Under the pieces are notes generated by a model. It was not told the DNA's origin and searched no databases. It was given only the letters and a program-made list of their open reading frames with translations. From Monocercomonoides exilis PA203 (Eukaryota; Protista; Preaxostyla): 64,000 nucleotides of DNA. Of the stretch, positions 1,490 to 58,700 are shown one piece after another (positions within the stretch are counted from its first letter, which is position 1; each line of letters opens with the position of its first letter). The translations under genes and the position numbers were made by a program. Where the stretch lies: NCBI GenBank assembly GCA_001643675.2, contig LSRY02000001.1, positions 1,488,001 through 1,552,000 of the forward strand, given 5' to 3'.

Positions 1490-1744
1490 AAGTTTTATTT
1501 TTTTCACAATAATAATAAGCATATTTTTATCATTTCATCTTTTCTCTTTATTTGTCTTTGTCATTTTAGTTTTTTTAACAAAATGTATAATTTTTTTAAA
1601 GCGTTATAAACTTAAGAGAATTGATGGGACTTTTTGATCAAATTGATAAAGAATGAAGTGTGTCTGCAAAATGTGACCAAGTTTTTATTTCTTTTATTGC
1701 TTTATGATTTGTTTGATTTTGTATAACATACTAATGCGTTGTGA

Positions 1745-4428: not shown

Positions 4429-4940
4429 GGAGCGGAGACAAAAGGTGTTTGCGAGTGTTATGAAATTGTATAGCGATTATAATTTCTGTTAATATCATTT
4501 TTACACCTGGTGTCTGTATTTATTGGGACACTCGTGCTTTCGTTTATTTTCAACAGGGCAAAATTTTTCAAGAATTTTGCTTCAGTTCCACATATTTAAA
4601 TATAATATTGTTTTTCATATGCGGATCTGACAATGTATGTTTGAAATCCATCAATGTATATGAGTGGCTTTCTTCATTATTTTTTAAAATTGTACCTTTC
4701 ACAACACCATTAAGCTTAATATTTACATATTATCCTTAAGTTACGATTTTTTATTTCATTATGCTTTAAAAGAACATCAAAGAAAAAATTTTTTTTCTTC
4801 TCCAATGTCGAAGTGCATAAAATGAAGTGAATGCAAGAAATATCCTTGCACATAAACTCAAACGAAAGATAGTACCGAAAAAAATACTTGTTTTTTTGAA
4901 AAAAATGATGAAGAAGTTTTGAAAGCAATCTCCATTTTAA

Positions 4941-27800: not shown

Positions 27801-30800
27801 AAGAAGAGACAACAGTTAATGAAGAGATTGATGAGGAATCTGAACTGTCATCAGAAGAAAGGAAGTCAGAGTGCATCACAATGCAGATCACCATGTGCTC
27901 AGAGAATAACACAATATGTGGACTCAGATTTGCAAGAGATGAGAGAGGATTCTCCATTTCATTGAAGGAGTGGAGCGCAAGATTAGCCACCCAGAACAGG
28001 ATTTGAGCAGCTGTCATCTCTCTTTCTATAAAGGTGCCAATCTACATCTCCTTTGTTTTATTCCGCCCATGAAGCAGCATGAACAACGAATCCCTCAAGT
28101 CAACGATCAATTTCTCATGTGGAGACGAACATGCCATTGCATCCACCAGATTCGACATCGATGAGGTGGTGGGGCACAGATCCTCCCCACGAACAAATGT
28201 TGAATCTGAATCAGTTGTCGAAGTGGATGAAATGGAAGGTGATGGTGAAGGAGATCTCTTTCTCACCTCTTCCTCCTCTTCCTTTTCTAATGCCCAATCA
28301 GGGATCTTGTCTGAGTCTTTCCCCAAGATGTATTCAGTCGATCCGCTCTCAGAAAGAAGATGTTCAGATGATTCTGAATGTTGCATATTCGTATCATATA
28401 TTCTCTTCTTCATCCTCTCATCATTCTTCTTCTCTGCTTCTCTCTCTGCTCTCCTCCATTGCTCCTCAGGAGACATCTCCATTGTCACCATCTCAAATGC
28501 CTTCGGATCTTTTCTGATATTATCGTTCACAATCTCTCTCAGATCTTTATTCTCATTCTTTGCTTTTCTCCATCTAACTGCAAGAATAACAGAAACAATC
28601 AGAACGACAAAAAATAATATTGCCAGCACAATAACAATCAATAACCAATAAGATTTTCCTTCTTTTCCTCCTTCAACAATTCTTTCATCTCCTTTTGGTT
28701 CAGATTCGCTTCTGTTCTTTAGGATGAAAGACTCAGTTGCAGAAGGAGAATGGCTATCACCAAACAAGATGCACACCCTCACTTCCACACTCGCCTCTGC
28801 TTCACTGACCATCTCCAACCCAGTTGTTCCATGCGCTTCCTCTTCGCTCACAAACCCAGACTCACTTATTTCGTGTGTCTCCATCTGCTCCACATCCCCC
28901 ATAGACGAAACAACCTGAAACGATAGGTTGCATGGCAGAAGAAGTGTCCCTCTGAACACAATGTCCAGCACCCCCTCCTTCTCCTCGGTCTCCACCGATC
29001 GGAGTGTGGAGATGAATAATGGCGATGCTCGCTCCTCAACAATCCCCTTCAAACTGCATCCATCATTTAAGATCCAAAGAGAAGAATTTGGCATCAATCC
29101 ATCTCCCCCTTTCAAGCTGGAAATGGTCAGTGATGCAGAACCTGAACAAATGATGTTTCGATGAAGAGATGGATATTTTTCAATGAAAGGATTGTTGTTC
29201 ATAAACTCTCCTTTCTCAATCGTCACATCGCCAGCGGACACTGACAATCCACCAGATGAAGCATTCGAAATAATCACATCCTTCATCACCAACGAAGAAT
29301 TCGCTGAGTGAACAAGTGATCTATTCCATTTGCATATTTCTTCAAAGTTATTATTTCTCTCATTTTCACTTTCTTTTGAAAGAATTCCTTCAAATTCACA
29401 CATAAGCATCGAAACATCCTTTGTATTGCTTATCTCCACAATACTCCATTTTTCAGAGAGAGAATCACAGCTTGAACAGGAACAGTTTGAAAGAACGATT
29501 TGAGCAGAAGTTGAAGAAACTGAAAGGACAGAAGCTCCTTCTGAATTCCTCGAACAGTTGTTGAATGAAGAGATTCCAATTGAAATTGAATTCGAAGATG
29601 AATCGCTAGTATAAATAATGCAACCTTCAGACAATTTCACTCCATCTGCAGATACTCCATTTAATACAACACTTCCACATTGTCCAATCTCAAATATATC
29701 TGTTGTTGATTCAAGTTGTTCCAGTTTCATATTTGTGATTGAAACCTCATCTCCATTTAACAAAAAAGGAATCTTCTTGAATGAAAGCATTGATATTGAG
29801 CAGTTATCAACATAAAGAATTCCATTTTCGATGCTCAGCAATGTTGAATTGAGAATAACTAATTCGATGTTTTCTGATTGGCCAATCGAAGAGAAATCAA
29901 CAAATGAAAGAAAAAGTTGTCCATTTGCTTCATGAATAATAGAATTGCCTGAATATGAAAATAACTGACCAAAATTGAATTTCACACTTTCGATCCTTAC
30001 TTTTTCTGATGTTGTGATAATACTTTCCTCGTTGGTTATTGTTGAGCTCAGATGCACCAAAGCAGCTGAGGGAGATTGCAATGAGCGAATAGTCACGTCA
30101 AGAACATCACACTTCCCAACAATTTCTGTTTGCCCCAAGACCAACAGCTGCGAGTAAAGAGATGGAATGATGTGCTGAATTCCAAAGCTCAATGAGCGGC
30201 ATGGGGTGTTGAACTCTCCACATTGCTTGCTATCTGCTGTGTTTTCAGAAACAGAAGACACAAATATCGTCTCGCTCTGGTATTTCACGACTCTCAGCAG
30301 AAGATCTTCTTCTCCAACAAAGGAGTCTATTGTGCATCCCCACATTGCCAGCTCTTTCACAAATGGTGCTCTGAAATCCAGCAAGAATTGTTCGTCGGCT
30401 ATTTGTGTTTCAATTGAATTGCATCGAACATACATATCTCTCCCTCTCAATGCAGAGTTGTCTCTGAACGTGATATTTGACAGAACAAACTTCAGAGGCT
30501 GCTCAGCTGTCGAGGCGCATTCCAGAAACAGCCACCCACCTCTTCCTGTGGTAGAGCAGAAGCACTCAGAAATCATGCAAAATGAGCACTCAAAACTTCC
30601 TCCCTCATTCAACATATAAAACATCCCTCCTCCATTTCCACACTTCAACCCTCCGCATCTCTTCATCGTTGTGTTCCGAATCACTATTTTCAATGGCTCA
30701 TCATTTTCATTTCGAATGATCGAGATGTTTTCTGTTGTGTTCTGGATGACTTCTTCGAACGAACTCCACTCAATAACAACATCTTGTTCCTCTTCATTTG

Positions 30801-33800
30801 TCTCTCTTCTTGAACTCTTTGATATGCTCAATCCACTTGCTCCCTCTAACTCGATATTCTTCATCGTCAGATTCTTCACATTCAGCACTGTTGTTGACAG
30901 CACAGAAATAACATCCTGCGAAAAGCTCAATAATTGCATCGTCACCAATTCCAACACAACTGTCCCTCCATCTGCTTTGATCAGTTTATAATTAATTATG
31001 AACTCTCCATTTTCTTCATTTTTTGTGAACGAACAATCCTTCAGAGTTAACAAACCTTCGTTTGAGCCAACATGTATCAAAACACTCACTCCACTCATGA
31101 ATGAAGAAGGAATCACTAACTTCATCAGCTCGAAATTGGTTATGCCCCAAATCTTCATAGCTGCTCCTTCTGCTCCTTCAAGCGATGAGACACATTCTAA
31201 TGAGCACATATCGTTATCTTTCGATTTTATCATCACCCCACTGAGATTGACACTCTTTTTGAGAATTCCTTTTCCAATGATGTTTATTCTCCTTTCATTT
31301 TCGTCAGGCAATCTCGAATATGAATGATCTATTGACAGGCAAGGATAATCTGAAAGACCACAAATGCACACATCTTTTCCATCATCACTGACAACTATCT
31401 CTGAGCCAAAGGTTCGCCAAAAATAGATCAATGGAATGGCATTCGTTGAATCATTTCCGTCAAAGCCACTCAAGGAATTCAATGAAATATCAGCAAAATG
31501 ATCAGATATAAAAGGAAGAGAGGTGTTTGTAATGCTCTTTGACAGATTCGATGATTCGACAAACAGATCATTTCCAAATCTTGCAACATTTGGTTTTTCG
31601 AAATCAAAAACAGGGGATAAGATCACAAATGAAGAATCATCATCAATCAGCTTCAGTGCCAACCCTCCTCCAAAGCCAGTCATACCTTCTTCAGTTGGTG
31701 CTGTGCATCCTGTGAATGTGCATGAAATAATATTCATTTGAATGCTCCCTTTCAACTGAGCATCAATGGCCCCTCCTCTGCTTTCATCACCAGCCACAGA
31801 GCATCCATCAAATTCACATTCTTCAATATTAATATGTGTATTTGTATTTTCATCATTGCTGTTGTCAATGCTCACACACCCTCCACTTCCAGCAGTTCTT
31901 TTGATTTTTGTGAAATTGCTGTTCGTCATGTTCAACCATAGAGTGTTCATCAACTCGGTATTTGTTCCACTTCCAGACAATGAGATCAATGGATTTCTCC
32001 TCAAATCAACCGATGAAGCTGAGAATTTGTCGATTATCAGGATCCCTGACTCAACAGACAAGAACAGAATTGTCAATTCTGATGATGGATTTTGAAGAGA
32101 AATCGAACATTGAGACAGAGTCATTGATGATGAAGATGACGAAATGAAAGTGGAGTGAAGAGGAAGGGAAGATGGAAGAGAGAAGATGAGTTTTGATAAT
32201 TCTGTTTCAGTACTTGCTGTTATCATCGATGAATTGGATATTGAACTTGAATCAGAGACTGTCCAACCACTTTGATCATTATTTCCTTTGACTTCATGTT
32301 TCTGTCCAGCAAATGCCAATTCATCACTCATCGCAATCATTCCATTCACAACAACTTTCTTTTCTCCTGTCAACCGTGCGAGTGAGTGCTTCAAAGTCAA
32401 ACATGGGAATTGGACAATTCCGCAATGTGAGTGATCAGATGCCTCAGTATTACTCACATATATTTCTTCTGGTGTGGGGAGGAGATAGATGCACAGAGGA
32501 ATGGCCAAAGTTGTATTTCCATCGTCATATCCTCTCACTTTCTCAAGAGTATCCAAAGAGGCTTCCACACATGTGATTTTTTCCGATTTTGCTGTTTCTT
32601 CCAGATTGGGTGAAATGACAAAGATATCATTCCCCCGTTTGGCTGTATTTGTTCCAAATGAAGAGGAGATCAGGAAGTCAGGATTTTCATTCAAGAATTG
32701 AAGAAGAATTCCTCCACCTAGTCCGTACGATGCAGAGCAATAGCACCCATCAAAAGATCCGCCTTTCACTTTCACCTCATTTCCATTCCCATCACACAGC
32801 ATCATCGATCCCCCATCAGCCGATGTTCTGCTTCCACATCCTTCAAAAGTGCTCGAATTCACATCAATGTTGGCCTTGTCATTCGAAAACGATATCACTG
32901 CTGCTCCGCTCGTTGTTCTCTCAATCCCATAAAAGGCACACTCTGAAAGTGTCAATGAAATCTCATTTGTTGAAGAAAGCGAAAACAACGAAACAGTGGA
33001 GATTGTCTTTGCCCAGTTCACATGTTCCATCTGAAACATCCCATTCTGGACATTTATCAGTTCTGTCGAAAATGCTGTTTCTGCTGATTGTCCGCTCCCA
33101 AAAGATATGTTCAGTCGGCTGATCCTCATTTCTCCTTCTCCACTTATCTCAAACAGCCTTGACCCACGATTATTCGGATGAGTCGAGTCATACACGAGAA
33201 CAAAGTCCCTGACAGTCAATGTGCCTGTTGAGACTGAAAAAAGAGACAACCCAGATGCTTCAAATTCTGTCCGGATAGCTGTGCTCAGATTGCTTTGACC
33301 ATAAACAGTAAAACTGTCTGCTCCACAATCAAAACTATTTGTTTCGATTATCGTTCCCGAAAATACTTCGACATTGGGAACCAAGTCTGGAATGAGTTGT
33401 GTGAGGCAACGGCTGATCGTGCTGCATGGATGAGATTTATCCAGCCCACATGCATATGTGTCGATGCCTTTTGGTTGTGAATTAGTTGAAAAAGCAAATC
33501 TCACATTTCCAAAATCATTGCGAAGCCAATCACTTTTGTCTTCCATGATCATGTGATTCACGCTGACTCTATTTGTTGTTTGTCTTGTTGAATAACAACT
33601 TGAATCTATGTTATTTAATATTGATCCATGCAATGTGATATCATTCCCACCAATTTCGCATGAATTATTATGAAAAAAACAGAAAAATAGCAATGTTCCG
33701 TTATTGTTTTCATTGATAAGTTGGCTTACAGCTCCACCACTTGCTTTTGAATAACAATTCCAAAAGTAACAGTTTGAAATTACAGCTTTATCAGTACAGG

Positions 33801-33888
33801 CCCAATGTTCTATTGCACCTCCAGTTGATGACTCTGTGTGGTTCGCTTTGCAAGATTCAAAATACGAATTGATAAAAACGCAGTGAGA

Positions 33889-33952
33889 CAGGTTTGCTCC
33901 GAGATAATGAGTATTAATATAAATTATGGGCGGTTTAAGTGAGAACTTCGCC
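33889..33952. repeat. Inverted terminal repeat, left arm (3' end of the element in coding orientation)
   Basis: 33889-33939 is the reverse complement of 38683-38733 at 48/51 nt; after 5 mismatches ACTTCGCC (33945-33952) pairs with 38670-38677. Confidence 0.95.
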
Positions 33953-34526
33953 CTCACCAAAATGACGTGGAAAAAAGGGCGAAATAAAATACAAAACAAT
34001 AACATTAATAATTGTCAAATGAAATAATGCATTGTCCGCTTCACTTCACCACCGACTTCGCCTTTTGCCTTGGTCACGAAGACCAGAGGGCAGGGGACAT
34101 TGCCCCTCGGAGCTGTCTCCTGCTGTCAGTGCAGGGATTTCGTGAGGCGAGTGTTCTGTTCGGAGCAGAAAGAAAAACCACTCTCGCTTTCACGAGGCGT
34201 GGAAAAGAAAACTGCATGTGATGTTCTCTGCCTCCCGCTCTTCTGTTGCATCAGCAGAGCAATCCTAATCATCATACACTGCAAATTAAAAATTCAATTC
34301 TTTTCTGTAAAAACAATGATAATCTTGAAAGGAGTGGGATTATTCTTGAAGTTATTTGTTCGTTTTCATGTTTCTCTAAACCGGTTCTGGGTGTACATTA
34401 ATTTCTTCGGGCGATTGGTCTTTCGGTCTCTCCTTCCCTGTCTCGCCCTTTTTTCACGTCATCTCTCCACGAACTTCAGGTTCACCTTCGCACCCAGCCG
34501 CATATTGTCTCTCCATCCGCATCCCT

Positions 34527-34623
34527 ATTATCTCGGAGCAAACCTGTCTCACTGCGTTTTTATCAATTCGCAATGGAGCGAATCTGCAAACGCAAGGAGC
34601 AGGTTTGCTCCTCAATAATGAGT
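34527..34623. repeat. Internal complementary region (ICR), a copy of the joined element ends
   Basis: 34527-34570 is the reverse complement of 33865-33908 (44/44); 34566-34623 is the reverse complement of 38710-38767 (58/58); the two halves overlap at ATTCG. Confidence 0.97.
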
Positions 34624-35226
34624 CTTGAAAGCCCTTTTCCAAATATTTATTTTGATTTAATTATATTTTTATTTATTAATTTATTTATTAGTACTGATCT
34701 TAAACCCTCTTGCCTAGCACGTCCTCGTGCGGCGGATGTTTAGAGAGCATGCGGATGAAGATGCGGTTCCTGTCTCTACTCCCTTCCTTTCTTGGGGTGT
34801 TTCCGAGGCGTAATCGACCGGGAATTCGTTTCTCTTGAGTTATTTATCATCCAACCGAGATATCTCACCCCCTGCTTCCTCCGGTCTGTGCGCATCTTCC
34901 TCTCTCTGAGGCAGTGTGTTTTCTTCTAGTCAGCTCTCTTCTGTTGCTGAGAATTATGAGCGGTGTTCTCCTAAACTAGGGTGGTCGGGATGAGTTGTGT
35001 TGTGATTGAGTTCTTTCTCTTCGCTTTATCTCTTCTCAAAGCTTAAAGTCTCGTTTCTTTGACCGCTTTCTCCTTTTCTCATATCTTCTTCTCCCCAAGC
35101 TTCTGATGTATTTTGGTGAAATCTCTCATCTCTAATTTTCCTTTCTCTATCCTCATCCGACCTTCCTTCCTCTATTTATATCCCACTTTTCTTCTTCTCC
35201 ACGAGGGGGTTCTTGAAAGTCGATCT

Positions 35227-36146
35227 TCAACAGGATCCATGACATATCTTGAACCAGTTGAATGGTTTAAATTTTCGGTCCACTCTTGATCCTTGTTCCC
35301 CCCTTGCGCGCGTGTTTCTCGCTTTCCAATCCGAGCCTTCTTGTATTGATTTGTGTATTATAACTTTATGTCTAATCGAGAATGTGGTCAAAGCATCGTG
35401 TTTGTCAAACTTTCTTTGAATAATTTCTAATTCTTCTTTTATTCTCTGCAAGTTTGCAGGCTCACCTTCTTTTATATCAACCACACGTGTTCATCTTTTA
35501 AAGTTGTCTTGGAAAAATCCAGTTTACGTTGGAGCGCTTCTTCTGCATCGATGAGAACGTTTGAATGTTTGTAAATATCGATATTTTTTGTCTTCCTTCC
35601 TGTCATCTATATCTGCACTTCTAGTGACACAGTATTCTCTTGTAATGTTGAACGCTCCCTTCTCACTCTCTCCAGCTCAGCTGGCTCTAACGTTGCAAAA
35701 ATAATAATGAGGATGAGTGCTCTCCCCTGGAGAGCTTGTGGGTCTATTGGGTTGGATGTGGTGTCTTCTCATTTAGTAATAATTGTAAAATCCCACATTG
35801 GTTAACATCATTGGTAGTTTCTCGACTTCTCTCCTTCGTAAGTTTCTTGAAATATATCCACTCTTTCACATCATTCGTCTGATGAATCACTCCACTTAAA
35901 AAATTCGTAGTCGATAGGTTATCAATAACTCTTGCCAAAATTCACCAGGCATCTTTCTCGATGAGGTGTCTGTTTTGTCTGTTCGTTCTCATCCAAAAAT
36001 TGTTTAAATATTTGCAGCTGTCTCCACGTATCAATTTTGTTCTTTTGATTAGTCAATATGGTAGCTGATATATCCTCTACTCCTACATCTTCTCCTCCTG
36101 TTTGAAAAAGTTTCCTTCTTATATATTTTCCTCTCCCGTCAAACAC
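35227..36146 (-). pseudogene. Decayed tyrosine recombinase of the element
   Basis: Frameshifted pieces read ..RALILIIIFATLEPAELERV.. (Arg box-like), ..HVW/DIKEGEPA.. and ..TFSIRHKVI..G.DW..N..ARGEQGSRV..F (H/Y-x-x-R and W/Y box-like); contains stops and frameshifts. Confidence 0.65.
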
Positions 36147-36149
36147 TAA

Positions 36150-36261
36150 TTATTTTTCATGGGGGAGAATTCAAGTCATCATTTCTCATCTCTAAAAAAG
36201 GTCAATCCGATGTTTCTTAATAACGGACTAGCACTGTCTATCCTTCTGGCATTTCTCTTTA

Positions 36262-36297
<36 letters not shown>

Positions 36298-36490
36298 ACT
36301 CTCTTCAGAGAGGATAGTCTCCAAATAATTCTTCAGGGCACCGGAGCAATCGTGTCTGAAATATAATCTAGTCTTCTCGGTGCGAATATTTGAAATGTCT
36401 CTTTAACTTTTTCCACTCTCAGTACATTGTCCGGTTTCTTCTAAGTCCGGCTGAGTGCGTCTATCGGTATTTTTGCTGAGATATGTTGAT
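36150..36490 (-). pseudogene. Remnant of the RNase H / C-terminal part of the pol ORF
   Basis: QHISAKIPIDALSRT resembles the RNase H motif HIPGxxNxxADALSR; downstream EMRNDDLNSPP*KII; many stops. Confidence 0.45.
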
Positions 36491-37316
36491 TCTTCTTCAA
36501 TTTTCATCACGCTGCACTATGCGGCTTATTTCTGTATCCGTCTCTCGAAGTCTATAGCGGTCTCATGCTCTGTCTTCTCCTCGCGTTTTTTCGCGGATTC
36601 ACTTCTTCAATATTCTCGTGAAATTTCGTGGTTACTATATCTACACCTGACTCGCGAAAATGCACTGTCCCTTATCTAATTATCGATTCGCAATCTCTCT
36701 CGACTGCTTTCTCTATCCTTCTCTCACAGCAAACTCAGCTTTTTCTTCCTTCAAACCCTTTCGATCAAAAGCAATTTGTAACTCCCCTATCATCTCGCGA
36801 CAATACACAGCAATCTTTTATCTCTCCGTCCCGTTGTATTTCGCGGTTTCACTTTTGTGATTATTTCTCTCATATTGAATCGTATTCTATCTTATTATAA
36901 ATTGATGATATTTCACTCTTTCAGTTTTGATATGTTGTTGTAATGCAGCTTGTCAATATTTACTTTGCGAAGGCCTCTCTAATTACTGAGTTTTCTATCT
37001 TAATTATCATCTCGCTGTGAAGCGCGGTTCTCTGCTATCTCTACTCTCATGATCTCAAGACTTCACGTTGTCTTGTTCCTCGTAAATATCTCTTTATTTT
37101 GTGCAGCTTCATTTCAATTATCTAAATCTTTATTGTTATAAAATTATCCTTCCATTTATATCTCGCTGTAATATGTGTATCGATTCTCACAGATATCTTT
37201 GTTATGCATATATGTGTATATTTTGTTTTCACATTTATCCGTATCTCGAAAAGCTGCTCATCTCTTCTCCTTAATAATCTTTTCTTCGTTATAAGTTAAT
37301 TCTCTTCTTATCCATA

Positions 37317-37580
37317 TCTCGCGGCAAAGCGCGGCTCTCTCTTCTCTCTTTTCTCTCTCTCCTCTCTTGGTCTCGCGGCAAAGCGCGGCTCTCTCTTCTC
37401 TCTCTCCTCTCTCTCCTCTCTTGGTCTCGCGGCAAAGCGCGGCTCTCTCTTCTCTCTTTTCTCTCTCTCCTCTCTTGGTCTCGCGGCAAAGCGCGGCTCT
37501 CTCTCCTCTCTTTTCTCTCTCTCCTCTCTTGGTCTCGCGGCAAAGCGCGGCTCTCTCTCCTCTCTTTTCTCTCTCCTCTC
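37317..37580. repeat. 54-bp tandem repeat, nearly 5 copies, inside the element
   Basis: GCGGCAAAGCGCGG recurs at 37321, 37375, 37429, 37483 and 37537; the minus strand reads (ALPRDQERRERKERRESR)n. Confidence 0.95.
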
Positions 37581-37955
37581 TCTATCTTGCGTACAAGAAC
37601 AGATTAATATTCTTTCTCTTTTCTTATGATCACAAGATATAACTAGGTTTGATTCTTCATAATTTAGGTTTGAATATGCACAGCTTCAATTTGATTTAAT
37701 TAATTTACAACTGTTATAAAATTATACTTGTATTAAAGAATCGCTGCAGTATGTGTATTGATCTTCACAAATATTTTTGCAAAATATATATGTATATGGT
37801 TTGTTGCTGCGTTAATCCATATTTCGCGGAACTACCCTATTCCTTTCCCTTGTTATCTTCTTTCGGGATTTTGTAGTATATCTATTTATTTCTATCTCGC
37901 TGAAAACCGTTGCTCTTCTTTCCTTTCAAAACGAATCATGATCTCGCGATAGAAC

Positions 37956-37959
<4 letters not shown>

Positions 37960-38011
<52 letters not shown>
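37960..38011. repeat. (TA)n microsatellite inside the element
   Basis: Directly visible. Confidence 0.95.
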
Positions 38012-38014
<3 letters not shown>

Positions 38015-38669
38015 ATTGTCACGTATTAACAAAATTTTGTATTTATGCAACTATCTTTTGGAAATTCGCAGTTTCATTATAAGTAATTATCTTTTTGCAG
38101 TAACTAAATTCTTCCTTAATAGAATTCTTGCAGCAATGTGTGCATAAATCCTCCTCCATTCTATCAATATCAAGCGATTTATTATTAATATTTTTTATAT
38201 TCAACTGCATCTCGTAATTCTTCGTAGCTCTTGTTCCTGATTAGTCAATTTTTCTTTGATTTTGTTAAATTTTTATCTCGCTGCTTGCTTGGCTCATTTT
38301 CCTAATAAATTAACAAAATATTATGTAGTTTCATTTTCTTTGAATTTCTATTAAAATACATATCTTCATTTTACACAAATATCTCACAATTTTCATAATT
38401 TCAGTTTTCAGTTATGCAGCTTCTGTTCTCAATGCTATCTCTTCATACTACGCAGCCCTCTGTTCAACACTCTCAGCTGTGCACTTCCTTCCATTAAGAT
38501 GAAGCATTTCAAGCTCAGGTCCTGGTTCATTCTTCAATCATATTTTCCTCTCTTACCAGTTCCAAAAATAAATCAAAATCTTTTCCAACGCTGTCTCTGA
38601 ATTTTTTGTAACAGGCAGTTGCTTCTTTATTATTGCGGACAATGAAGCTCTTCTTTGAATTATAGAATT

Positions 38670-38733
38670 GGCGAAGTAAGATCTTAAACCGCCCATAATT
38701 TATATTAATACTCATTATTGAGGAGCAAACCTG
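38670..38733. repeat. Inverted terminal repeat, right arm (5' end of the element in coding orientation)
   Basis: Reverse complement of 33889-33952; overlaps the hairpin AGGAGCA-AACC-TGCTCCT (38721-38738). Confidence 0.95.
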
Positions 38734-40964
38734 CTCCTTGCGTTTGCAGATTCGCTCCATTGCGAATCGATAATACAATGTTTCTGCCTTTGAGTTATTG
38801 TTGGACGCAAATCAATTGCACCTGCATCATTTCCGGATGAACAATTTTGAAAAAAGCAATCATCAACGATTGGTTGAACACAGATGTTTTCGATCATGAT
38901 TCCGCCTCCCCCGCAATTTGTTGTAGCTTCAGCTGAGCATTGAATAAATAAAGAATGAAGAACAATGCATTCAGCTATTTTCAAGGCGTAAATTCCACCA
39001 CCTCTTGTCGACGAAGCATTGCATCTCGTAAAAGAAGAATTCTCAACTGTGAGAATGGTGCTTGTGTTGTCATGAACATAAAGAGCGCCTCCTTGTGGGG
39101 ATGTGCAATCTTCCCATTCACACAACGAAAAGGATTGGCTTTCTGTTGTGTTCAGTTTTTCCTTTTTCTGAAGAGCATTCATTTCTCTTTTCCCAAAGTT
39201 TATTGTCATATTTTTGCAGATGAATTCATGTGAAGAATATGATCCACTCGAGATCCCTCCTTCAAAGACATTCACACACGAATAAATGAGACAGTTCTCC
39301 ATTGAACTTCGAAAACATGAATGTTCCACAAAATGATCGCTATTCGCGGCATATTTCACAGACATGTTCCTGAAGGCACAATTAATGATCTGTTCAATTT
39401 TGCTCTTTCCTGATAATAGGAAATTGTCTGAAGATGAGATGCCCAGGTCTGTGATGATGGAATTGCTCAAAATGGCTGAATTGGAATCATCAGATGAAAA
39501 TATGAGACTGGACGGATTAAGATTTTTTGGGGGGATCAAACTCAAATTCACCATTTCTATTGACCCACTTTGCAAAACAAAGGGAGATTCCGATTTTTGG
39601 TGGAAAATGCATGAATCAATCAAAATGGCTGATTTGTCATAAATTCGCATTGATGGCGACAACGTATATTCAAATGCTATATTTTTCAGTCCAACTGAAG
39701 AATTGGCAAATGTGAAAAATGTGCCAATTACTGAAGAAATTCCTGAATGCAAAACTTTCTTTTCTAAAATATTTCTCTGTTCATCCAAGGAACAAATATT
39801 GTTATTTGAGGAATAAAGCTTATCTTCTGGCACAACTCCATAAAGATAATTATAAAATTTGTAAGAAATAAAAGTTTTCCAATCATTGTGCTTTTTCAAT
39901 GTGGCAGTTCCAATTTTGTCTTGTCCATTCAACGCTTTTGTCAGGAAAAGAAATGCCAAAAGAAACAAATACATGTTCATCTGAAATAAAAATCAATTTG
40001 ATCTGATGGATTTAATGTTTTTTAATTGAACAAACTTAGCATTATTGTTATTTATTTTTATTGAAAGCTAAACGAAAATCAATGAGTTTTTTGATTTCAA
40101 CATTCGTTTTTCACAAATGGAAATGTAATGATTTTCACCATTAATAGAAGTTCTGAATGAAGATGGGGTGGGTGAACTGAATTCAATTTTTGATAATAAT
40201 ATATTAATACAACAGAAAACAAATTGCAAGTGATGAAACCCTGCAACTATTTGCAATTTTAACCAAAAAGAAGATTCAAAAAAACAACACTTTTGAAGGT
40301 TTTTCACTTGATTGAAGCCTTTCATTGTTTTGATTCAAAATTGAGCAAAGAAAACATGAGAAAAAACTCCTGGGGGAAGTGGCGTCTTTCGGTAAAGTTG
40401 AAAAGAGTGTTGGAATGTCTCGATATGTTGAATCAATGTTTTCACCGAAGTTCTCATCCAATGCATTGGAAAATGTTCAGGCTAAAGAATGAGTTTTATT
40501 TTGTGCAGGGTTATGCATAACAAAAAAATTATTTTGGATGTTTGTTTGTTTGTCTGACCTTTTTATCAAAATGAACATTTGAAAACCTACTTTTAGAAGA
40601 TATTTTGAGTATTTCTTTTGGTGAAAAAGAAAATAGTTAACGCATCAATAAATTCATTTAAATGCACAATTTGTTTCTTTGAGTGGGGTGGAGAGGGAGG
40701 AAATGAAAGTTTTCTGTTGAAATTATATTGTTGCGGTTGATTCAAAAGTGCAAAATACAGTCCAAACTGGATTTAGTTACATCGCATATTATCACATTAA
40801 TTAAAAATTACATTTTTGTGTGCAATATCAATTTTTTTATTAATATTTCATTTATCATTCATCGCATTCAATCACAGTGAAATTTTCACATTATCACATT
40901 TTTTATTATTAAAAATGATTTTTTATGAAAAATCTGTTTTTTAATTGAAAATTTCGATTTTCAT

Positions 40965-52748: not shown

Positions 52749-55700
52749 TTAGTTGCGATATGAACTCTTTCCTTCCTTTTTCCGTTTCTTTTTAATTTCG
52801 ATCAATTTCTTTGAGTGCTTTTCAAGCGTATTGAAACACCATTGTCTCAGAAGAGGTGAAGGAAGAGTACGATAAATAGCTGGAGAGAGTGATGATGTTA
52901 AGGAAATGCAAGGCTGAAGAAAGTATTTGTGCATTATTTCTGCAATTCGTATTGATTTAAAATCTACAATTCCTTGGAGCATGTTCATCGTTAGAGAAGT
53001 TAGCTCACCCAAAATGTCAATGGTTGGCAAATTCAGATTGTCAGATACCATTACATACTCAAACTCAGGATATTTTTTACCAATTGCATCATTAGAAGAT
53101 GCTGAGTCGCTTCCTGATTGCTTTTCTGAACCCGTTGCTCCATTAGCGCTGTCCTTTTCTGCTCTCTTCTGCTCCCCAACCATAACAGCAAGGGCAGCCA
53201 TCTTCTTTATGTGAAATTCTGTGCTTTTCCCTTCGGCCTTCTTTTTCTCCTCTCTCATTTTGTTCATGAGAAGCAGCTGCATAGGCACAGCAGCAGGAGA
53301 ATGAAAATCTTGGAGCGACCGCCAGACAGATGAAGAGGCAAGTGGAACGCTTTTCCCGTCTGAAGATTGCTGGTTCATTCCTCTTCTGGCGCTGCCCTTC
53401 TTTGCACCATATTGAAATTCACTCAGAAATGATTTCAGAATACGAGTAAAGGTCAAATAAGGAGTCCCTGTGTCGCTGGTCGCGAATTGCTGCTTGAAGA
53501 GCGTGCGGGCTGCACACAAGAAAGTGTTTCCTTCAACTGCACGTGTGGCGGATAGAACAACACGTGTAGTGGGAATAGTCAGGAAGGATTCAAGTGTGTA
53601 CTCCTCATCCAACGAATCTGCCAATGCATAACCTTTTTTGGTGTGTGCAATTGATGTGACTGTTGGCTGCCCCAGAAGGATATCCAACTGCTGATCAAGA
53701 ACCATGAATGAACTGGACAAGGCACTATCAACAGAGAGAGACGATTTAGCAGTTGTTTCGGCACGTGTTGAAATAAGTCTGTTTATCACATCTGAATTAG
53801 CAGATGTCAAAAAGCAAGGCAAGATTGTTTGAACTGTTTTAATTGATATTTCTTTGAGCTCAAGCTGTACCCACTCCTTGGCAGATGAAAACTCTTCATC
53901 TGTAGCTCGGACCATTAAAGATGACACACACAGCATTGCTCCACCATCAAAGTGCACATTAGCTTTGAGCCAGTTTTTGGCGAACTGAGAGACAGCAAGC
54001 TCAAATGATGCTCCAAGTGAGGCAATGGGAACTTCAGCACTTTCGTCCTTCGTCTTTTCTGATCCTGTAGCCGGTGAATAAGCATTGGATGATGCTGACT
54101 GAGAGCCAAGCCGATGAACAGATGAAGTTTTCGTTAGACTTGTCGATGAATGAATTGGAGTGGAAGGTGATGGATGGGTATTTGATTCACCAGGAAATAT
54201 TAAGTCTGAAATCGTTTTGTAAGGATTCGACAAAATGTTTTCAGGCGAGACGAATGATGAGTTCACACCCCGTGGAACAATATCCAAAAATCTTGACTCT
54301 GAATTTTGCATCAATTGGTATGGAAGCACTCCACTTATATCAGCTGAGCTTGATCTTAATTGCTTGTGCGCCAATTGTTCTGATCTTAATCTTGATTGAT
54401 AGCTTCCGCTGCCTGAAGAATATGCAGATTGAGATCTTCCTTGCCCTAACATTGCTCTCTTCTTTGGCTTTTCCTTTTCAGGTCTTTTTCTTTGCCTTAA
54501 TCTCGAAGAGCTATTGCTATCTTCTTCCAATGTGAAGGAATTACGAATGCTGCTCAGCTCTGACTCGCCTCTGCGAATCATATCTCCCTTCACAGAAACA
54601 AGAGCTGCATTCACTTGAGAAACCATCATCAGCACTTCGCTTTTGATAGATGCAACAGAAGAGATTAAAGTGGGTATTGTAAGTGACGACAGTGTAATTA
54701 CAACGCGATCAAAGAGAATTGGTAAGCAAGTAACAGTAAAAGAATTAACGAGTTGCATCTGCTGTTCAATAAGCATTTTTGAGCTTGGATAATCATATGT
54801 TTGTTTCACATTATCGTCAGATTGTTGTTCAGATTCCAAATGCAAAGGCGAAAGCGGAGTGGGAGGAGATGTGGCGGGAATGGTAGGAGAAACACCGCTT
54901 GATGGGGAAAAAGACCGTGGAATTGAAGGGGATTGATTCGATGAAGGCACATCCTGTTCAGCCAATATTGAACTCTGCTTGGAAGGAGTTGAAACGAAAA
55001 TCGGTTGCAATACTCTTTTTGCCGATGGAGAAGTAAATTCTGTTTCATTCTGTGTTTTTGCTGTGCTTGCTGGTGTTGCAGATGTTGGTGGAATTGCCGA
55101 TACGGTTGAATGATGACTTAACTGATTTATGCGCTTTTGTCCCTTTTGCATTTCTTTTAAGGCTAGTTGACCGTAAACGGAAGGATTCACCGAATTCATG
55201 TTAAGATTGACGCGAATATGGCTAATTGACGCATCCATCAGTGAATGAAGCGCAGAGTCCATTACAACTCCAATACTGTCAATGTCTGTAAACAGAACAC
55301 CACATCGATTGCCTTCAACTGTCACACCAAATGGCAAGCGCATCATTAACGAATGTAGAAGAGAAGAATGGTCCCATCCACGGCGCGCTGATGAATATGA
55401 GGCAGATTGAGAAGCTGCTTGAGGAGCAGGCTTTGATGTTCCAGTGATGTTGTCCAGAATCGTCTGGAGCGTTGAAGCGTCTCCAATTCCATAAACACCA
55501 TACGAAGGAGGACGATTTGCTCTATGCAGATCCTCTCTTGCATTGCACCGAATCCATGGAGATGGAATAACGTTGTTTATTGCATTGATATCATCATTGG
55601 TTATTCTCATTGGATCAAATTCTTGTGTTGACTCTGAAGGAGATAGTTCCTGTGGTTCTTTTTCTCCCTCCTTTTTTCTTCGTTGCATAACTTTCCTCAT

Positions 55701-58700
55701 CCTCACTTTGTTTTCGTGGTTTGGATCAGCAACACAAATAAGACGTTCAGAATATCCACATGGAATAATAAATACAGTGGGGATAAAGGCAGACACTCCA
55801 ATTTGAGCAATAGTAAAATCTGTTGTTAGAGAACCCTTGATTTTCAATGCAATACTTTCAACAGATGCAAATAGCAGTATTATTGGCTGCAATGATCGAT
55901 ACGCACTTGTTGCAGATGGAGATAGAGAAGACGATTGCTTAATGTTGGAAAGAGAATCATTTGAAAACAAAGAGTTGCTTTGCACAATTTGTTGAGACTG
56001 AACGCTTTCAATTGCTGTTAGAGATTCTTCAGAAACTTTCGTTGAATCAAGATGAGCGAATAAATTTACCATTGTTAATCTGAGTTGCTGCGGAGATGAT
56101 CCTTTCACCGGAGCTGTGTAGCTGCCTGAAATAATAAACGATCTTAGATTAATGCAGAATTCCCACGGTAATCGTTTCTTCTCCTTCTTTGTTCGTTCTT
56201 TTATTAAGGCTTCATAAGAAAGAGCTTCTTGTTCTTTCTGAGTTTGCTTGCCTCTGTCAGCTGATTCAAACAATGCATCTATTTGCTTGTACTTTCTGTT
56301 ATATGCATGTGTAGCCTCTTCTTCCTTTCGCTGAATTGAATCTGACCGGGCCCTATATTCTTCTGTTGCTGTTCCAGAAACGCTTTGCTTACGAGGCAAA
56401 CTGGACTCGTCCTTTGCTGTAAATGCTGAAATAAAGCGGGATACTGTCTTGAATATGGAGATGATTGGGGAGTAGTCTTCTAAGCTGATTGATTCGAAAG
56501 AAAAGGCACCAATCTCACCAGCCACATGAAGAAGAGGAGGAGGAATATCTGGATTGTATTCACAACTGTGAGGAACAGAGTATGTGGCATGGGCCATTGT
56601 GTTCTGTATTGCCAACGAAAAGGCATTCTTATCGGAAAATCTTCTCCCTGGCTTTGACGCTCGCAATACAGAAACATGAAACAGCGGTGCTGTGAGTGTA
56701 AACAGAGTGAGATTCATCCACATTTTGACGGGTCTGTAAGGTTCAGTTGAAGATTGAGAACTCGAAGAAGTTGCAGCTTCGGATTGTTCAGAGACAATCT
56801 CATTTTCATCTTCTGATGATTTCTCGTGTTGTTTGTGCCTCTTTTGATGCCTAAGTTGCTGTTGTTCGACATACTCCTCGTTTTCAGATGGGACAAACTT
56901 GTCTGATAAGCTGGCACTTTGCTCTTGTTGCATTTTTGAATCAGATACATTTCCACCATTTGCTTCATCTGCTGATGAATTAGCCTGCATTTGTGAAGAT
57001 GAGCTGGATGCTGCTTCTTCCAATAAGTCTTGCACTTCCTCATCCTCGTCCTCCGGTGAATCAAGTGAAAGACTGGAAATCGAAAATGAAGCATCCAATG
57101 ATGATTGTGGAAGCATTCTGATTGCACACGTTACACCATCATCACACCCAACAACCAGATCTTCCATCTCCACATGGAGTATAACTTGAACCGTTGTGCG
57201 CATTGACGGTGCTGGTTTAGACTCAGGTGGTGAAAGTGCATTTGATTGTTCGTTAGAAATCTTTGTAGAATCGGAAACAATGTCGGATGAAATCTTTTTA
57301 TTAGGAACCGAAGCAGAATAAGATTGAATAGAGGCAGAATACGATCCCTCATTTGGCTTTACAATTATATTTTGTTGATCAGCTTCTGAAGAAGCAAACT
57401 CTTGTAACTTTATCACAGGTGAAGGTTGTTGAATATTAATTGCTTCTGAACTATTCTTTGCTCCTTCTTGTTGAGCAATTTGATTCTGTCGAGAAGCAGA
57501 TGGCGAGGCTTCTTTGGAATTCGGGAATATGTTGTTCATCTGTTGCGATGGCTGCTTTTGCACAAAATGCAAACGATGCGCACGTGAAGTGCTTCTGTGA
57601 TGACCAATGGAAGGAAGAGGGTATAAAGGCGATGAAGCATATGGCAATTCATTTGGATTAATCATAAATTGTTTTTGAAGGGATGAAGGATCGCTCATAG
57701 AATGCACATAACTGTCCACAGAATGAAGAAGTATTTTCCTTTCGGCATATTCCTGCTCTTCATCCAATCTCATCAATCGTTTGATGTTAATTGCAACAAA
57801 ACAGTCTCTCAAATTCTGCTTTCTCTCCTTTGCAGCTGCTTTGATCATCCAACCGGCAACCATCGTTTGAGAGATCGAAAGAAGTGCAGCATCCACAAAA
57901 GTGCTTTGTAGCTCCAATTTTGATGGTGATCGAATATTGATAAAGGTAACCACATTTGCAGTTGATGGTTCTCTTGGTGCATTCTTTGCTGCAATGTCTG
58001 TGTCAGTGTTAAACGAGCTTGTTGTCAGACTTCCTGAACCATATCTTCCTCCGTCTTCGCTATTCGAAGCTGCATCAACGAACATCTGTGGAGCAGATTG
58101 TCCAGCTTTGGAACTTTCATCTTGATAGAAAAATGCATTTGTTTGCTTGTTTCCTTCAGTTGCTTGCTCTTTCCTAAGCATTTGAATGGTGACTTCATTT
58201 TCATCTTTGCTGTTTTCATTTGATTTTATAATTTTTCCTGGTTGCTGCGTTCCACTTGCTCGAATAATAACTTCTGGAGATAAAATTACATGTACAATAT
58301 TATACAGTCCGAATGCAGACACATTTGCAGGAAGCTTTCTCTGAGTTGTTGGAATAGGCATTCCGGATGATGTTGTTGGGCCAGCAAAACCTGTCAAATG
58401 GTCAAGTCCAAATTTCGAGTGAGGCATGTTTGTTTCTGTACTCAGCAAAGAAGGATGGAGAGAAATCGGAGAAATCAAAGCAATTTTTGTTGGAGACAAA
58501 TAGAACATTAAATTGACTTCGATTCGCCTGTCGCCAAATAGCGAAAATGATGGGAAATCAAAACTTTTTGCTGATGGAACAATCGAGACACCACTTGTTT
58601 CATATGTTATCTCAGTTTGCTTTTCGCCATTTCCATCTGTTGCACTTGTGAGAAGACCTTGTTCAGACAAAGCATTCGTCTCTTCGCAGGTTTGTCCTCC

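What the first reader, a model, noticed from the sequence alone, without database searches (positions are those of the whole stretch)
33865..38767. DIRS1-like element carrying an exact internal copy of its circular junction
Seen: inverted termini with different outer ends, and a 97-bp internal region (34527-34623) that is the perfect reverse complement of the right end joined to the left end (58/58 and 44/44 nt) across ATTCG. The order on the minus strand is ITR, repeat-rich region, RNase H remnant, recombinase remnant, ICR, ITR. Established: DIRS1-type retrotransposons have ITRs plus an ICR that templates end regeneration and yields a circular intermediate integrated by a tyrosine recombinase. 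Inference: a DIRS family with very short (about 50-65 bp) ITRs in this lineage, missed by ORF-based annotation.
Basis: partly seen in the sequence, partly recalled or inferred. Interest (0 to 1): 0.88.

Follow-up and report, generated by a model that had tools for sequence, protein, structure and literature searches.

The report
Non-autonomous DIRS1-type retrotransposon in Monocercomonoides
This is a 4.9-kb gene-less copy of a DIRS1-type (tyrosine-recombinase) retrotransposon that recently landed inside a large surface-protein gene of the oxymonad Monocercomonoides exilis; it is a textbook member of a known kind, notable because it has no genes of its own and must be copied by proteins of intact relatives.

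Summary
Window 34527-34623 is the perfect reverse complement of the 3' end (44/44) joined to the 5' end (58/58) of an element spanning 33865-38767, sense on the minus strand. The genome is Monocercomonoides exilis (82.3 Mb, 101 contigs).

At least 63 exact ICR junction cores occur in the genome. Intact 6-kb relatives encode gag-like, RT/RNase H and tyrosine-recombinase ORFs and have the same ends, so the DIRS1-like reading holds.

The window copy is not a decayed autonomous copy. It belongs to an RT-less family with no long ORFs (seven full copies examined, 4.3-4.9 kb). That family keeps only the termini, the ICR, a conserved 3' block and a broken recombinase remnant.

Three members are 96-98% identical at different loci, and two of them share the same stops, so the family moves in trans. 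ICR and termini co-vary between lineages.

There is no target-site duplication. The ATTCG overlap is particular to this copy; family-wide the 5' flank ends in A, AA or CAA. Removing the insert restores a 2350-codon host frame, so the insertion is young.

Its ITRs (64 nt) sit at the low end of the published range.

First-stage notes of this scan had already flagged DIRS elements elsewhere in this genome. Verdict: real, new member of a known kind, moderate interest.

The parts
33865..33888 (-). 3' outer extension (rE), complementary only to the ICR. Bases 33865-33868 (sense TTCG) are shared with the target and are ambiguous; the family-level 3' end ...ATCAA is at 33869.
33889..33952 (-). 3' inverted terminal repeat. 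It contains the 12-nt core CAGGTTTGCTCC at 33889-33900.
   Evidence: I2: 64 nt, 88%; D6
34040..34295 (-). Conserved non-coding block between the ICR and the 3' ITR. Function unknown.
   Evidence: column identity 0.89-0.97 over 21 copies; highest DNA word depth; no Rfam family, no significant fold
34527..34623 (-). Internal complementary region. 34527-34570 is complementary to the 3' end and 34566-34623 to the 5' end. The junction ...GCGAA|TTGATA... (sense) lies at 34568|34567.
34782..36202 (-). Tyrosine-recombinase remnant, 31-46% identical to residues 889-1378 of the intact relative's YR ORF. It is spread over three frames and no long open frame remains.
36309..36461 (-). Remnant of the C-terminal tail of the pol ORF (residues 823-873), downstream of the RNase H domain.
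36462..38669 (-). Repeat-rich 5' region of about 2.2 kb with no gag or RT homology. It replaces gag, RT and RNase H of the autonomous relative.
37317..37583 (-). 54-bp tandem repeat, 4.9 copies. One stretch of the array (window 37317-37362) matches nt 1392-1437 of the intact relative at 89%.
38670..38733 (-). 5' inverted terminal repeat. It contains the core GGAGCAAACCTG at 38722-38733.
   Evidence: I2, D12
38734..38767 (-). 5' outer extension (lE), complementary only to the ICR. Base 38767 (sense A) is shared with the target.
28042..33864 (-). Downstream part of the interrupted host gene, a large predicted membrane protein with cysteine- and GGAI-containing repeats.
38768..39980 (-). Upstream part of the interrupted host gene, with a signal-peptide-like start and a weak beta-helix match below the Pfam cut-off.

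Best explanation
Window 33865-38767 (sense on the minus strand) is a non-autonomous, RT-less member of a DIRS1-like tyrosine-recombinase retrotransposon family of Monocercomonoides exilis, and it has no long ORF.

Shown: it keeps the cis parts. These are two termini (a 64-nt ITR plus unequal outer extensions), a 97-nt ICR that equals the complement of the 3' end joined to the 5' end, a conserved block of about 250 nt, and a constant distance of about 700 nt from the ICR junction to the 3' end. It has lost gag, RT and RNase H and carries only a broken recombinase remnant.

Inferred from the established DIRS-1 model (Cappello and co-workers, as summarised in PMC7192593 and PMC3266345):
- A transcript lacking the outermost ends is reverse-transcribed by RT supplied in trans by intact relatives, for example the copies with the same ICR type on contigs C20, C38 and C53.
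- The ICR templates regeneration and joining of the ends.
- A tyrosine recombinase, also supplied in trans, recombines the joined ends with a target that shares A, AA or CAA (here, unusually, 10 of 11 bases around the junction). No target-site duplication results.

This copy inserted recently into the coding sequence of a large surface-protein gene.
For: - Exact ICR and termini complementarity.
- At least 63 exact ICR junction cores in the genome against 0 for the reversed control pattern.
- An intact 6.06-kb relative on C20 has the same ends and ICR, a gag-like ORF (364 aa), an RT/RNase H ORF (979 aa; RVT_1 1.2e-27) and a YR ORF (1379 aa; Phage_integrase 9.2e-12).
- The genome holds at least 150 RT and 98 YR matches.
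- The window copy aligns to that relative only at the 5' 100 nt, one 46-nt piece, the pol tail, and the YR-to-3'-end stretch.
- All seven full RT-less copies have a longest ATG ORF of 151 aa or less.
- C35a, C21 and C7 are 96-98% identical over their full length, at loci with unrelated flanks. C35a and C7 share the same HSP columns and stop counts in the YR remnant.
- ICR against own ends gives 0-4 mismatches (0-1 in most copies), against up to 8 when ICR and ends come from different lineages. Four ICR:3'-end pairs show compensatory changes.
- No target-site duplication in the other full copies.
- Among 44 distinct 5' flanks, the last base is A in 40, AA in 28 and CAA in 12 (my hand count).
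- Removing the insert while keeping one CGAAT restores a 2350-codon open frame.
- The nearest RT relatives outside oxymonads with a diagnostic domain carry Phage_integrase or Dam domains, and they score above rve-bearing Gypsy-type proteins.
Against: - No direct evidence of an RNA or cDNA intermediate for this copy.
- The only junction-like record is one low-depth contig from an RNA library. A k=31 assembler could create it from the 44-nt inverted repeat.
- No near-identical sibling of the window copy was found; the best other copy is 84% identical. Its immediate source is therefore unknown.
- The relative's pol ORF has no detectable Dam-type methyltransferase domain.
- In Dictyostelium a truncated DIRS-1 made cDNA in trans, but completion of its retrotransposition was not shown (PMC7192593).
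Confidence: 0.87

Rival explanations
1. DNA-level mobility. The RT-less elements behave like Cryptons: a tyrosine recombinase supplied in trans excises them as double-stranded circles at the ITRs and reinserts them, with no reverse transcription.
For: The family lacks RT. Integration shows a recombinase signature with no target-site duplication. First-stage notes in this genome mention RT-less elements that keep a recombinase (unchecked).
Against: The ICR would have no role in cut-and-paste, yet it is among the most conserved parts of the RT-less copies (0.93-0.96). It also co-varies with the termini between RT-less lineages. Copy number has grown. The ICR is experimentally required downstream of reverse transcription in DIRS-1 (PMC7192593).
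Confidence: 0.07
2. In-situ decay. An autonomous DIRS copy inserted here and later lost its genes by deletion and mutation at this locus.
For: The recombinase remnant is heavily mutated. No close sibling of this copy is in the assembly.
Against: The same RT-less architecture is collinear in at least seven full copies at other loci. ICR and termini show 0 differences over 102 compared bases, whereas the body differs by 16% or more from every other copy. The host reading frame is still open over 2350 codons once the insert is removed.
Confidence: 0.04
3. Chance inverted repeats or an assembly artefact.
For: None beyond the general risk in repeat-rich long-read assemblies.
Against: 0 matches expected in shuffles. 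63 junction cores against 0 for the control. Contigs from 2016 and 2022 DNA runs lie along the element at 95-100% identity.
Confidence: 0.01

Closest known systems
DIRS-1 of Dictyostelium discoideum (type element of the DIRS order)
   Same: Inverted termini with non-identical outer ends. An ICR near the 3' end that is the exact complement of both extremities placed side by side (88 nt there, 97 nt here). In the autonomous relative, gag, RT/RNase H and YR with a long out-of-frame overlap of the pol and YR ORFs. No target-site duplication (PMC7192593, PMC3266345).
   Different: ITRs are about 64 nt rather than about 300 nt. A conserved spacer of about 560 nt lies between the ICR and the 3' ITR. 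No Dam-type methyltransferase domain was detected. The window copy has no RT and no intact ORF.
DIRS1-like elements with short termini and both extensions (for example LgDIRS1, AcaDIRS1, RoDIRS1 in Piednoel et al. 2011, PMC3266345)
   Same: The fine structure lE-ITR ... lICR-rICR ... ITR-rE. A core of at least 10 nt repeated in both ITRs and both ICRs (here a 12-nt core, four times). ICR sum within the published 85-130 bp. ITR length next to the published minimum of 66 bp.
   Different: Most published elements begin and end with NTT (usually ATT) and have a strict 3-bp junction. Here the shared bases are A, AA or CAA on the 5' flank and the 3' flank is not T-rich. The host is a metamonad; in that 2011 survey the only excavate host listed (Naegleria gruberi) remained uncertain.
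SIRE, the truncated non-autonomous derivative of VIPER in Trypanosoma cruzi (PMC6681497)
   Same: A non-autonomous derivative of a tyrosine-recombinase retrotransposon that keeps terminal cis sequences and is amplified.
   Different: SIRE is a short element of roughly 435 bp by its described parts, derived from a split-direct-repeat element. The family here is 4.3-4.9 kb, has ITR plus ICR architecture, and retains a long non-coding body and a recombinase remnant.
Cryptons (tyrosine-recombinase DNA transposons)
   Same: Integration by recombination at a few bases shared between a circular form and the target, with no target-site duplication. No RT.
   Different: By my recollection Cryptons lack ITR plus ICR architecture. 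Here the ICR is conserved and co-varies with the ends, and the closest relatives are RT-encoding DIRS elements.

Membership tests
DIRS1-like retrotransposons (DIRS order, ITR/ICR type) | Inverted terminal repeats whose outer ends differ (extensions) | tested here: met
   pair I2 (64 nt, 88%). The outer 24 nt and 34 nt are unrelated.
DIRS1-like retrotransposons (DIRS order, ITR/ICR type) | An ICR in the 3' part equal to the complement of the 3' end joined to the 5' end | tested here: met
   44/44 and 58/58. The same holds in 8 other full copies.
DIRS1-like retrotransposons (DIRS order, ITR/ICR type) | A short core (at least 10 nt) present in both ITRs and both ICR halves | tested here: met
   The 12-nt core is at 33889-33900, 34535-34546, 34600-34611 and 38722-38733 (D6, D12, I19).
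DIRS1-like retrotransposons (DIRS order, ITR/ICR type) | No target-site duplication; a few bases shared between the joined ends and the target | tested here: met
   No duplication in the 7-8 other full copies. 5' flank: A 40/44, AA 28/44, CAA 12/44. 3' flank first base: A 13/23. The shared motif is not the usual NTT.
DIRS1-like retrotransposons (DIRS order, ITR/ICR type) | Encodes gag, RT/RNase H and a tyrosine recombinase | tested here: not met
   The window copy has no RT or gag homology and only a broken YR remnant. The feature is met by relatives with the same ends on C20 and C2. The copy is therefore a non-autonomous member.
DIRS1-like retrotransposons (DIRS order, ITR/ICR type) | Long overlap of the pol and YR ORFs, with the catalytic YR domain in the non-overlapping 3' part | tested here: met
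   In the C20 relative the YR ORF (sense 1058-5197) overlaps the pol ORF (885-3824). The Phage_integrase match lies at residues 1061-1218.
DIRS1-like retrotransposons (DIRS order, ITR/ICR type) | Dam-like methyltransferase domain at the end of pol | tested here: not met
   No PF05869 or any other family in the pol C-terminal 189 aa, even at E up to 10. A divergent domain cannot be excluded.
DIRS1-like retrotransposons (DIRS order, ITR/ICR type) | Replication through RNA and cDNA with ICR-templated end regeneration | tested here: inconclusive
   Indirect support comes from ICR and termini co-variation. RNA-library contigs lie on the element but strand and origin are unknown. The one junction-like contig may be an assembly artefact.
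Ngaro / PAT / VIPER (split-direct-repeat YR retrotransposons) | Split direct terminal repeats (A1 ... B1 A2 B2) | tested here: not met
   The termini are inverted, not direct. No direct terminal repeat family was found.
Crypton DNA transposons | YR-only element without ITR/ICR and without RT-encoding relatives (criterion from memory, not checked in a paper here) | tested here: not met
   ITR plus ICR are present and conserved. The closest relatives encode RT.

The most novel reading that the evidence does not exclude
The RT-less family with no long ORFs is a long-lived 'mini-DIRS' lineage in which every protein function is supplied in trans. It would then define the minimal cis requirements of DIRS retrotransposition: the termini, the ICR and the conserved 3' block of about 250 nt, which could be a new cis-acting signal for priming, packaging or recombinase binding. 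It would also give the first structurally complete DIRS1-like family in a metamonad, pushing the origin of ITR/ICR elements deeper into eukaryote history.
Probability: 0.5. Interest if true: 0.55.

Novelty: new member of a known kind. Interest (0 to 1): 0.4.

Why it matters
- Repeat annotation. The M. exilis genome paper left 35% of the assembly as unclassified repeats and does not mention DIRS (PMC8767320). This family, and the many RT and YR matches in the genome, explain part of that fraction.
- Distribution of the kind. The 2011 survey of DIRS1-like elements could not confirm them in Excavata because the copies were too degraded (PMC3266345). Here complete ITR/ICR architecture and intact ORFs are present in an oxymonad.
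- Trans-mobilisation. Experiments in Dictyostelium showed that RT acts in trans on a truncated DIRS-1 but could not show a full cycle (PMC7192593). Near-identical copies without long ORFs at independent loci are natural evidence that the whole cycle can be completed in trans.
- Minimal cis parts. The retained parts point to what DIRS retrotransposition needs in cis.
- Effect on the host. The insertion disrupts a large surface-protein gene.

Tried and rejected
- Target-site duplication reading of CGAAT: rejected. The other full copies have no duplication, and the shared bases vary from 0 to 5.
- 'RNase H remnant': the match lies after the Pfam RNase H region.
- Known RNA families or tRNA-like primers in the element: none. 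Two chance-level Rfam hits and 0 tRNAs.
- Structured RNA in the conserved 3' block: fold z-scores of only -0.8 and -1.1. Local hairpins are invariant, so they carry no information.
- Antisense ORF across that block: not conserved in frame between copies.
- Methyltransferase domain: not found.
- Reads: only assembled contigs were available. No joint for an empty site was seen. One junction-like contig in an RNA library is explainable by the 44-nt inverted repeat being longer than the assembler's word, so it is not counted as evidence.
The flank census therefore relied on pattern searches that print the matched letters, which I counted by hand. The outermost flank position was restricted to A or T.
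- Literature: no paper in the library combines Monocercomonoides with DIRS. This library does not include Repbase or Dfam, so prior deposition there cannot be excluded.
Full report
**1. Observation**

Reading window 33700-38950 and the repeat search confirm the finding at the stated coordinates.
- 33865-33908 and 34527-34570 are 44/44 complementary.
- The first 58 bases of the sense strand (38710-38767) are 58/58 complementary to 34566-34623 (checked).
- The two halves overlap on ATTCG, giving a 97-nt internal complementary region (ICR).
- The termini share a 64-nt inverted repeat (33889-33952 and 38670-38733, 88%).
- They carry unrelated outer extensions of 24 nt at the 3' end and 34 nt at the 5' end.
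- A 12-nt core (CAGGTTTGCTCC and its complement) occurs four times, once in each ITR and once in each ICR half (D6, D12, I19).
- A 45-nt pattern from the end has 0 expected chance matches in the window.

**2. Surroundings**

The element has no open frame longer than 125 codons on its sense strand. It splits a large intronless minus-strand ORF. Removing 33870-38767 and keeping one CGAAT restores a single open frame of 2350 codons, reading ...HCIIDSYFESC... across the site. The host protein has a signal-like start, a C-terminal membrane segment and only a weak, sub-threshold beta-helix match.

**3. Organism**

Proteins of related elements are named Monocercomonoides exilis in public sources. The genome size and contig count (82.3 Mb, 101 contigs) fit the Nanopore assembly described in PMC8767320. 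That paper reports 46% repeats, of which 35% of the assembly is unclassified, and it does not mention DIRS. No paper in the searchable library combines Monocercomonoides with DIRS.

**4. The family**

The element's DNA finds more than 225 matches in its own genome at 65-100% identity. The genome also holds at least 150 RVT_1 and 98 Phage_integrase matches, many inside open frames of 600-1480 codons.

A 6.06-kb relative on contig C20 (locus L051, positions 1053-7116, minus strand) has:
- the same ends and an ICR with perfect complementarity (59/59 and 41/41);
- a 364-aa gag-like ORF;
- a 979-aa ORF with RVT_1 (1.2e-27) and RT_RNaseH;
- a 1379-aa ORF whose 3' part is a Phage_integrase domain (9.2e-12). 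Its first 900 or so codons overlap the pol ORF out of frame.

This long overlap, with the catalytic recombinase in the non-overlapping 3' part, is the arrangement described for DIRS1-like elements (PMC3266345). No Dam-type methyltransferase domain was detectable in the pol tail.

An exact search for the ICR junction core gives 63 sites, against 0 for the reversed control pattern. Eight sites carry the window's ICR spelling. Four of these (contigs C20, C38, C53, C8) lie beside YR matches, and three of those (C20, C38, C53) also beside RT matches.

**5. The window copy is non-autonomous by descent, not by local decay**

Against the C20 relative it aligns only at four places:
- the first 100 nt (91%);
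- one 46-nt piece, which lies inside the 54-bp tandem array and matches nt 1392-1437 of the relative;
- the pol tail (residues 823-873);
- the stretch from the recombinase region to the 3' end (70% over 2.3 kb).

About 2.2 kb of repeat-rich sequence stands in place of gag, RT and RNase H.

Six further full copies (4.3-4.9 kb, on C12, C35 twice, C21, C7 and C69) have the same RT-less architecture, and their longest ATG ORF is 151 aa or less.
- C35a, C21 and C7 are 96-98% identical over 99-100% of their length and sit between unrelated flanks.
- C35a and C7 share the same frame breaks and the same numbers of in-frame stops in the same alignment columns of the recombinase remnant.
- These copies therefore transposed when they already lacked functional genes.

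The window copy itself has no close sibling; the best other copy is 84% identical. Yet its ICR and ends show 0 differences over 102 compared bases, and the disrupted host frame is still open. Its insertion is therefore much younger than its divergence from the other subfamilies.

**6. Evidence that the ICR is functional**

- Across nine full copies, each ICR half matches its own terminus with 0-4 differences (0-1 in most copies), against up to 8 when ICR and ends come from different lineages. This includes a lineage-specific 1-nt insertion present in both partners.
- In a 17-sequence alignment of the 3' module, the ICR:3'-end helix contains four pairs with compensatory changes, for example GC in 10 sequences and AU in 7.
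- The ICR columns are 0.93-0.96 conserved, more than the recombinase region.
- The distance from the ICR junction to the 3' end is 697-704 nt in all nine copies.
- In Dictyostelium the ICR is experimentally indispensable, at a step after first-strand synthesis (PMC7192593).

**7. Integration**

The other full copies show no target-site duplication.

Pattern searches that print flanks gave 44 distinct 5' junctions and 23 distinct 3' junctions. I counted them by hand.
- The base before TTCG is A in 40 of 44, AA in 28 and CAA in 12. From the A+T-rich composition I would expect only about 31%, 10% and 2% (my own rough estimate).
- The first base after ...ATCAA is A in 13 of 23 and T in 6.

The element body is therefore TTCG...TATCAA. 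The bases shared between the joined ends and the target are usually A, AA or CAA. This differs from the NTT (mostly ATT) reported for 23 of 28 annotated DIRS1-like elements (PMC3266345).

The window insertion is unusual. Its target, TTATCGATTCG, matches the joined ends, TTATCAATTCG, at 10 of 11 positions. That is why five bases (ATTCG) appear shared here. This is one post-hoc observation. I regard it as suggestive of homology-guided site choice, not as proof.

**8. Reads**

Only assembled contigs were available.
- DNA contigs from 2016 and 2022 runs of one sample lie along the element. Word depth is very high over the termini, the ICR and the block at 33962-34323, as expected for sequences shared by many copies.
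- Four contig sets from an RNA library of a synthetic community place 100%-identical pieces on 35661-36115, 36307-36489, 36976-37243, 37743-37900 and 38220-38495. Nothing lies on the host flanks. This is compatible with transcription, but strand and DNA carry-over cannot be judged.
- One 165-nt contig reads from 33985 to the 3' end at 33865 and then continues with the first 44 bases of the 5' end. This is the sequence of joined ends. However, the 44-nt inverted repeat is longer than the assembler's 31-letter word (as I understand Logan's contigs). The contig also stops before the position that would tell a 5' ITR from the ICR. I do not count it as evidence.
- No joint indicating an empty allele was seen.

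**9. Unexplained**

The block at 34040-34295 is the most conserved non-coding part of the family. It has no Rfam match and no significant folding signal on either strand. The antisense ORF across it is not conserved in frame. A helix between GGYGGT at its 3' edge and ACCRCC in the 3' ITR shows UA in 9 sequences and CG in 4.

**10. Comparison and verdict**

The architecture matches the published fine structure of DIRS1-like elements point by point: lE-ITR, lICR-rICR, ITR-rE, and a core repeated four times (PMC3266345).
- The ICR sum of 97 nt is within the published 85-130 bp.
- The 64-nt ITR is next to the published minimum of 66 bp.

The differences are:
- the (C)AA junction bases;
- the spacer of about 560 nt between the ICR and the 3' ITR;
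- no detectable methyltransferase domain;
- a metamonad host;
- for this copy, the loss of all genes.

Non-autonomous derivatives of tyrosine-recombinase retrotransposons are known in principle (SIRE of VIPER, PMC6681497).

I therefore file the element as a new member of a known kind. It is real, well supported and of moderate interest. First-stage notes of this scan had already flagged DIRS-type and RT-less DIRS-derived elements on other pieces of this genome. I treated those as leads only.

Noticed in passing
window 34040-34295 (minus strand): A non-coding block of about 250 nt between the ICR and the 3' ITR is the most conserved part of the whole family (0.89-0.97 per 25-nt bin over 21 copies). 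It has the highest DNA word depth. No Rfam hit, no significant fold, and no frame-conserved ORF.
   Followed up: partly
alignment A1 columns 593-598 / 723-728 (window about 34046-34051 with 33930-33935): A predicted helix GGYGGT / ACCRCC links the end of the conserved block to the 3' ITR. One pair shows compensatory change (UA in 9 sequences, CG in 4, UG in 3).
   Followed up: no
window 33865-33985 joined to 34571-34614 (run X6, record 23): A 165-nt contig from an RNA library reads the 3' ITR, the 3' terminus, then the first 44 nt of the 5' end. That is the joined-ends sequence. It may be real, an ICR-templated extension product, or an assembler artefact of the 44-nt inverted repeat.
   Followed up: partly
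L051 (G000:C20:1010600-1020500), positions 1920-6232, minus strand: In the intact relative, a 1379-codon frame that ends in the recombinase overlaps the 979-codon RT/RNase H frame out of phase for about 2.77 kb. How the recombinase is translated is unknown.
   Followed up: no
G000:C25:2123484-2123515 (+) and 2126453-2126484 (-): The same 15-nt flank precedes a 5' end on both strands about 3 kb apart. This is a head-to-head (palindromic) arrangement of two 5' ends rather than a normal copy.
   Followed up: no
G000:C51:173415-173448: The 3' flank of one copy begins with CAATTCG, the core of the joined ends. This is either another insertion into a junction-like site or a nested or tandem arrangement.
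   Followed up: no
window 37317-37583: A 54-bp tandem repeat (4.9 copies, 96% matches) lies inside the non-coding 5' region. One stretch of the array (window 37317-37362) matches a 46-nt segment lying just after gag in the intact relative at 89%. A motif resembling ATCTCGC recurs through 36600-38300.
   Followed up: partly
window 52749-63848 (minus strand): A second very large open frame (3699 codons) lies in the same window. It was not examined.
   Followed up: no
one search hit list: The closest RT relatives outside M. exilis are unnamed metagenome proteins at about 40-42% identity and Streblomastix strix proteins at 33-36%. This suggests the family is widespread in oxymonads.
   Followed up: no
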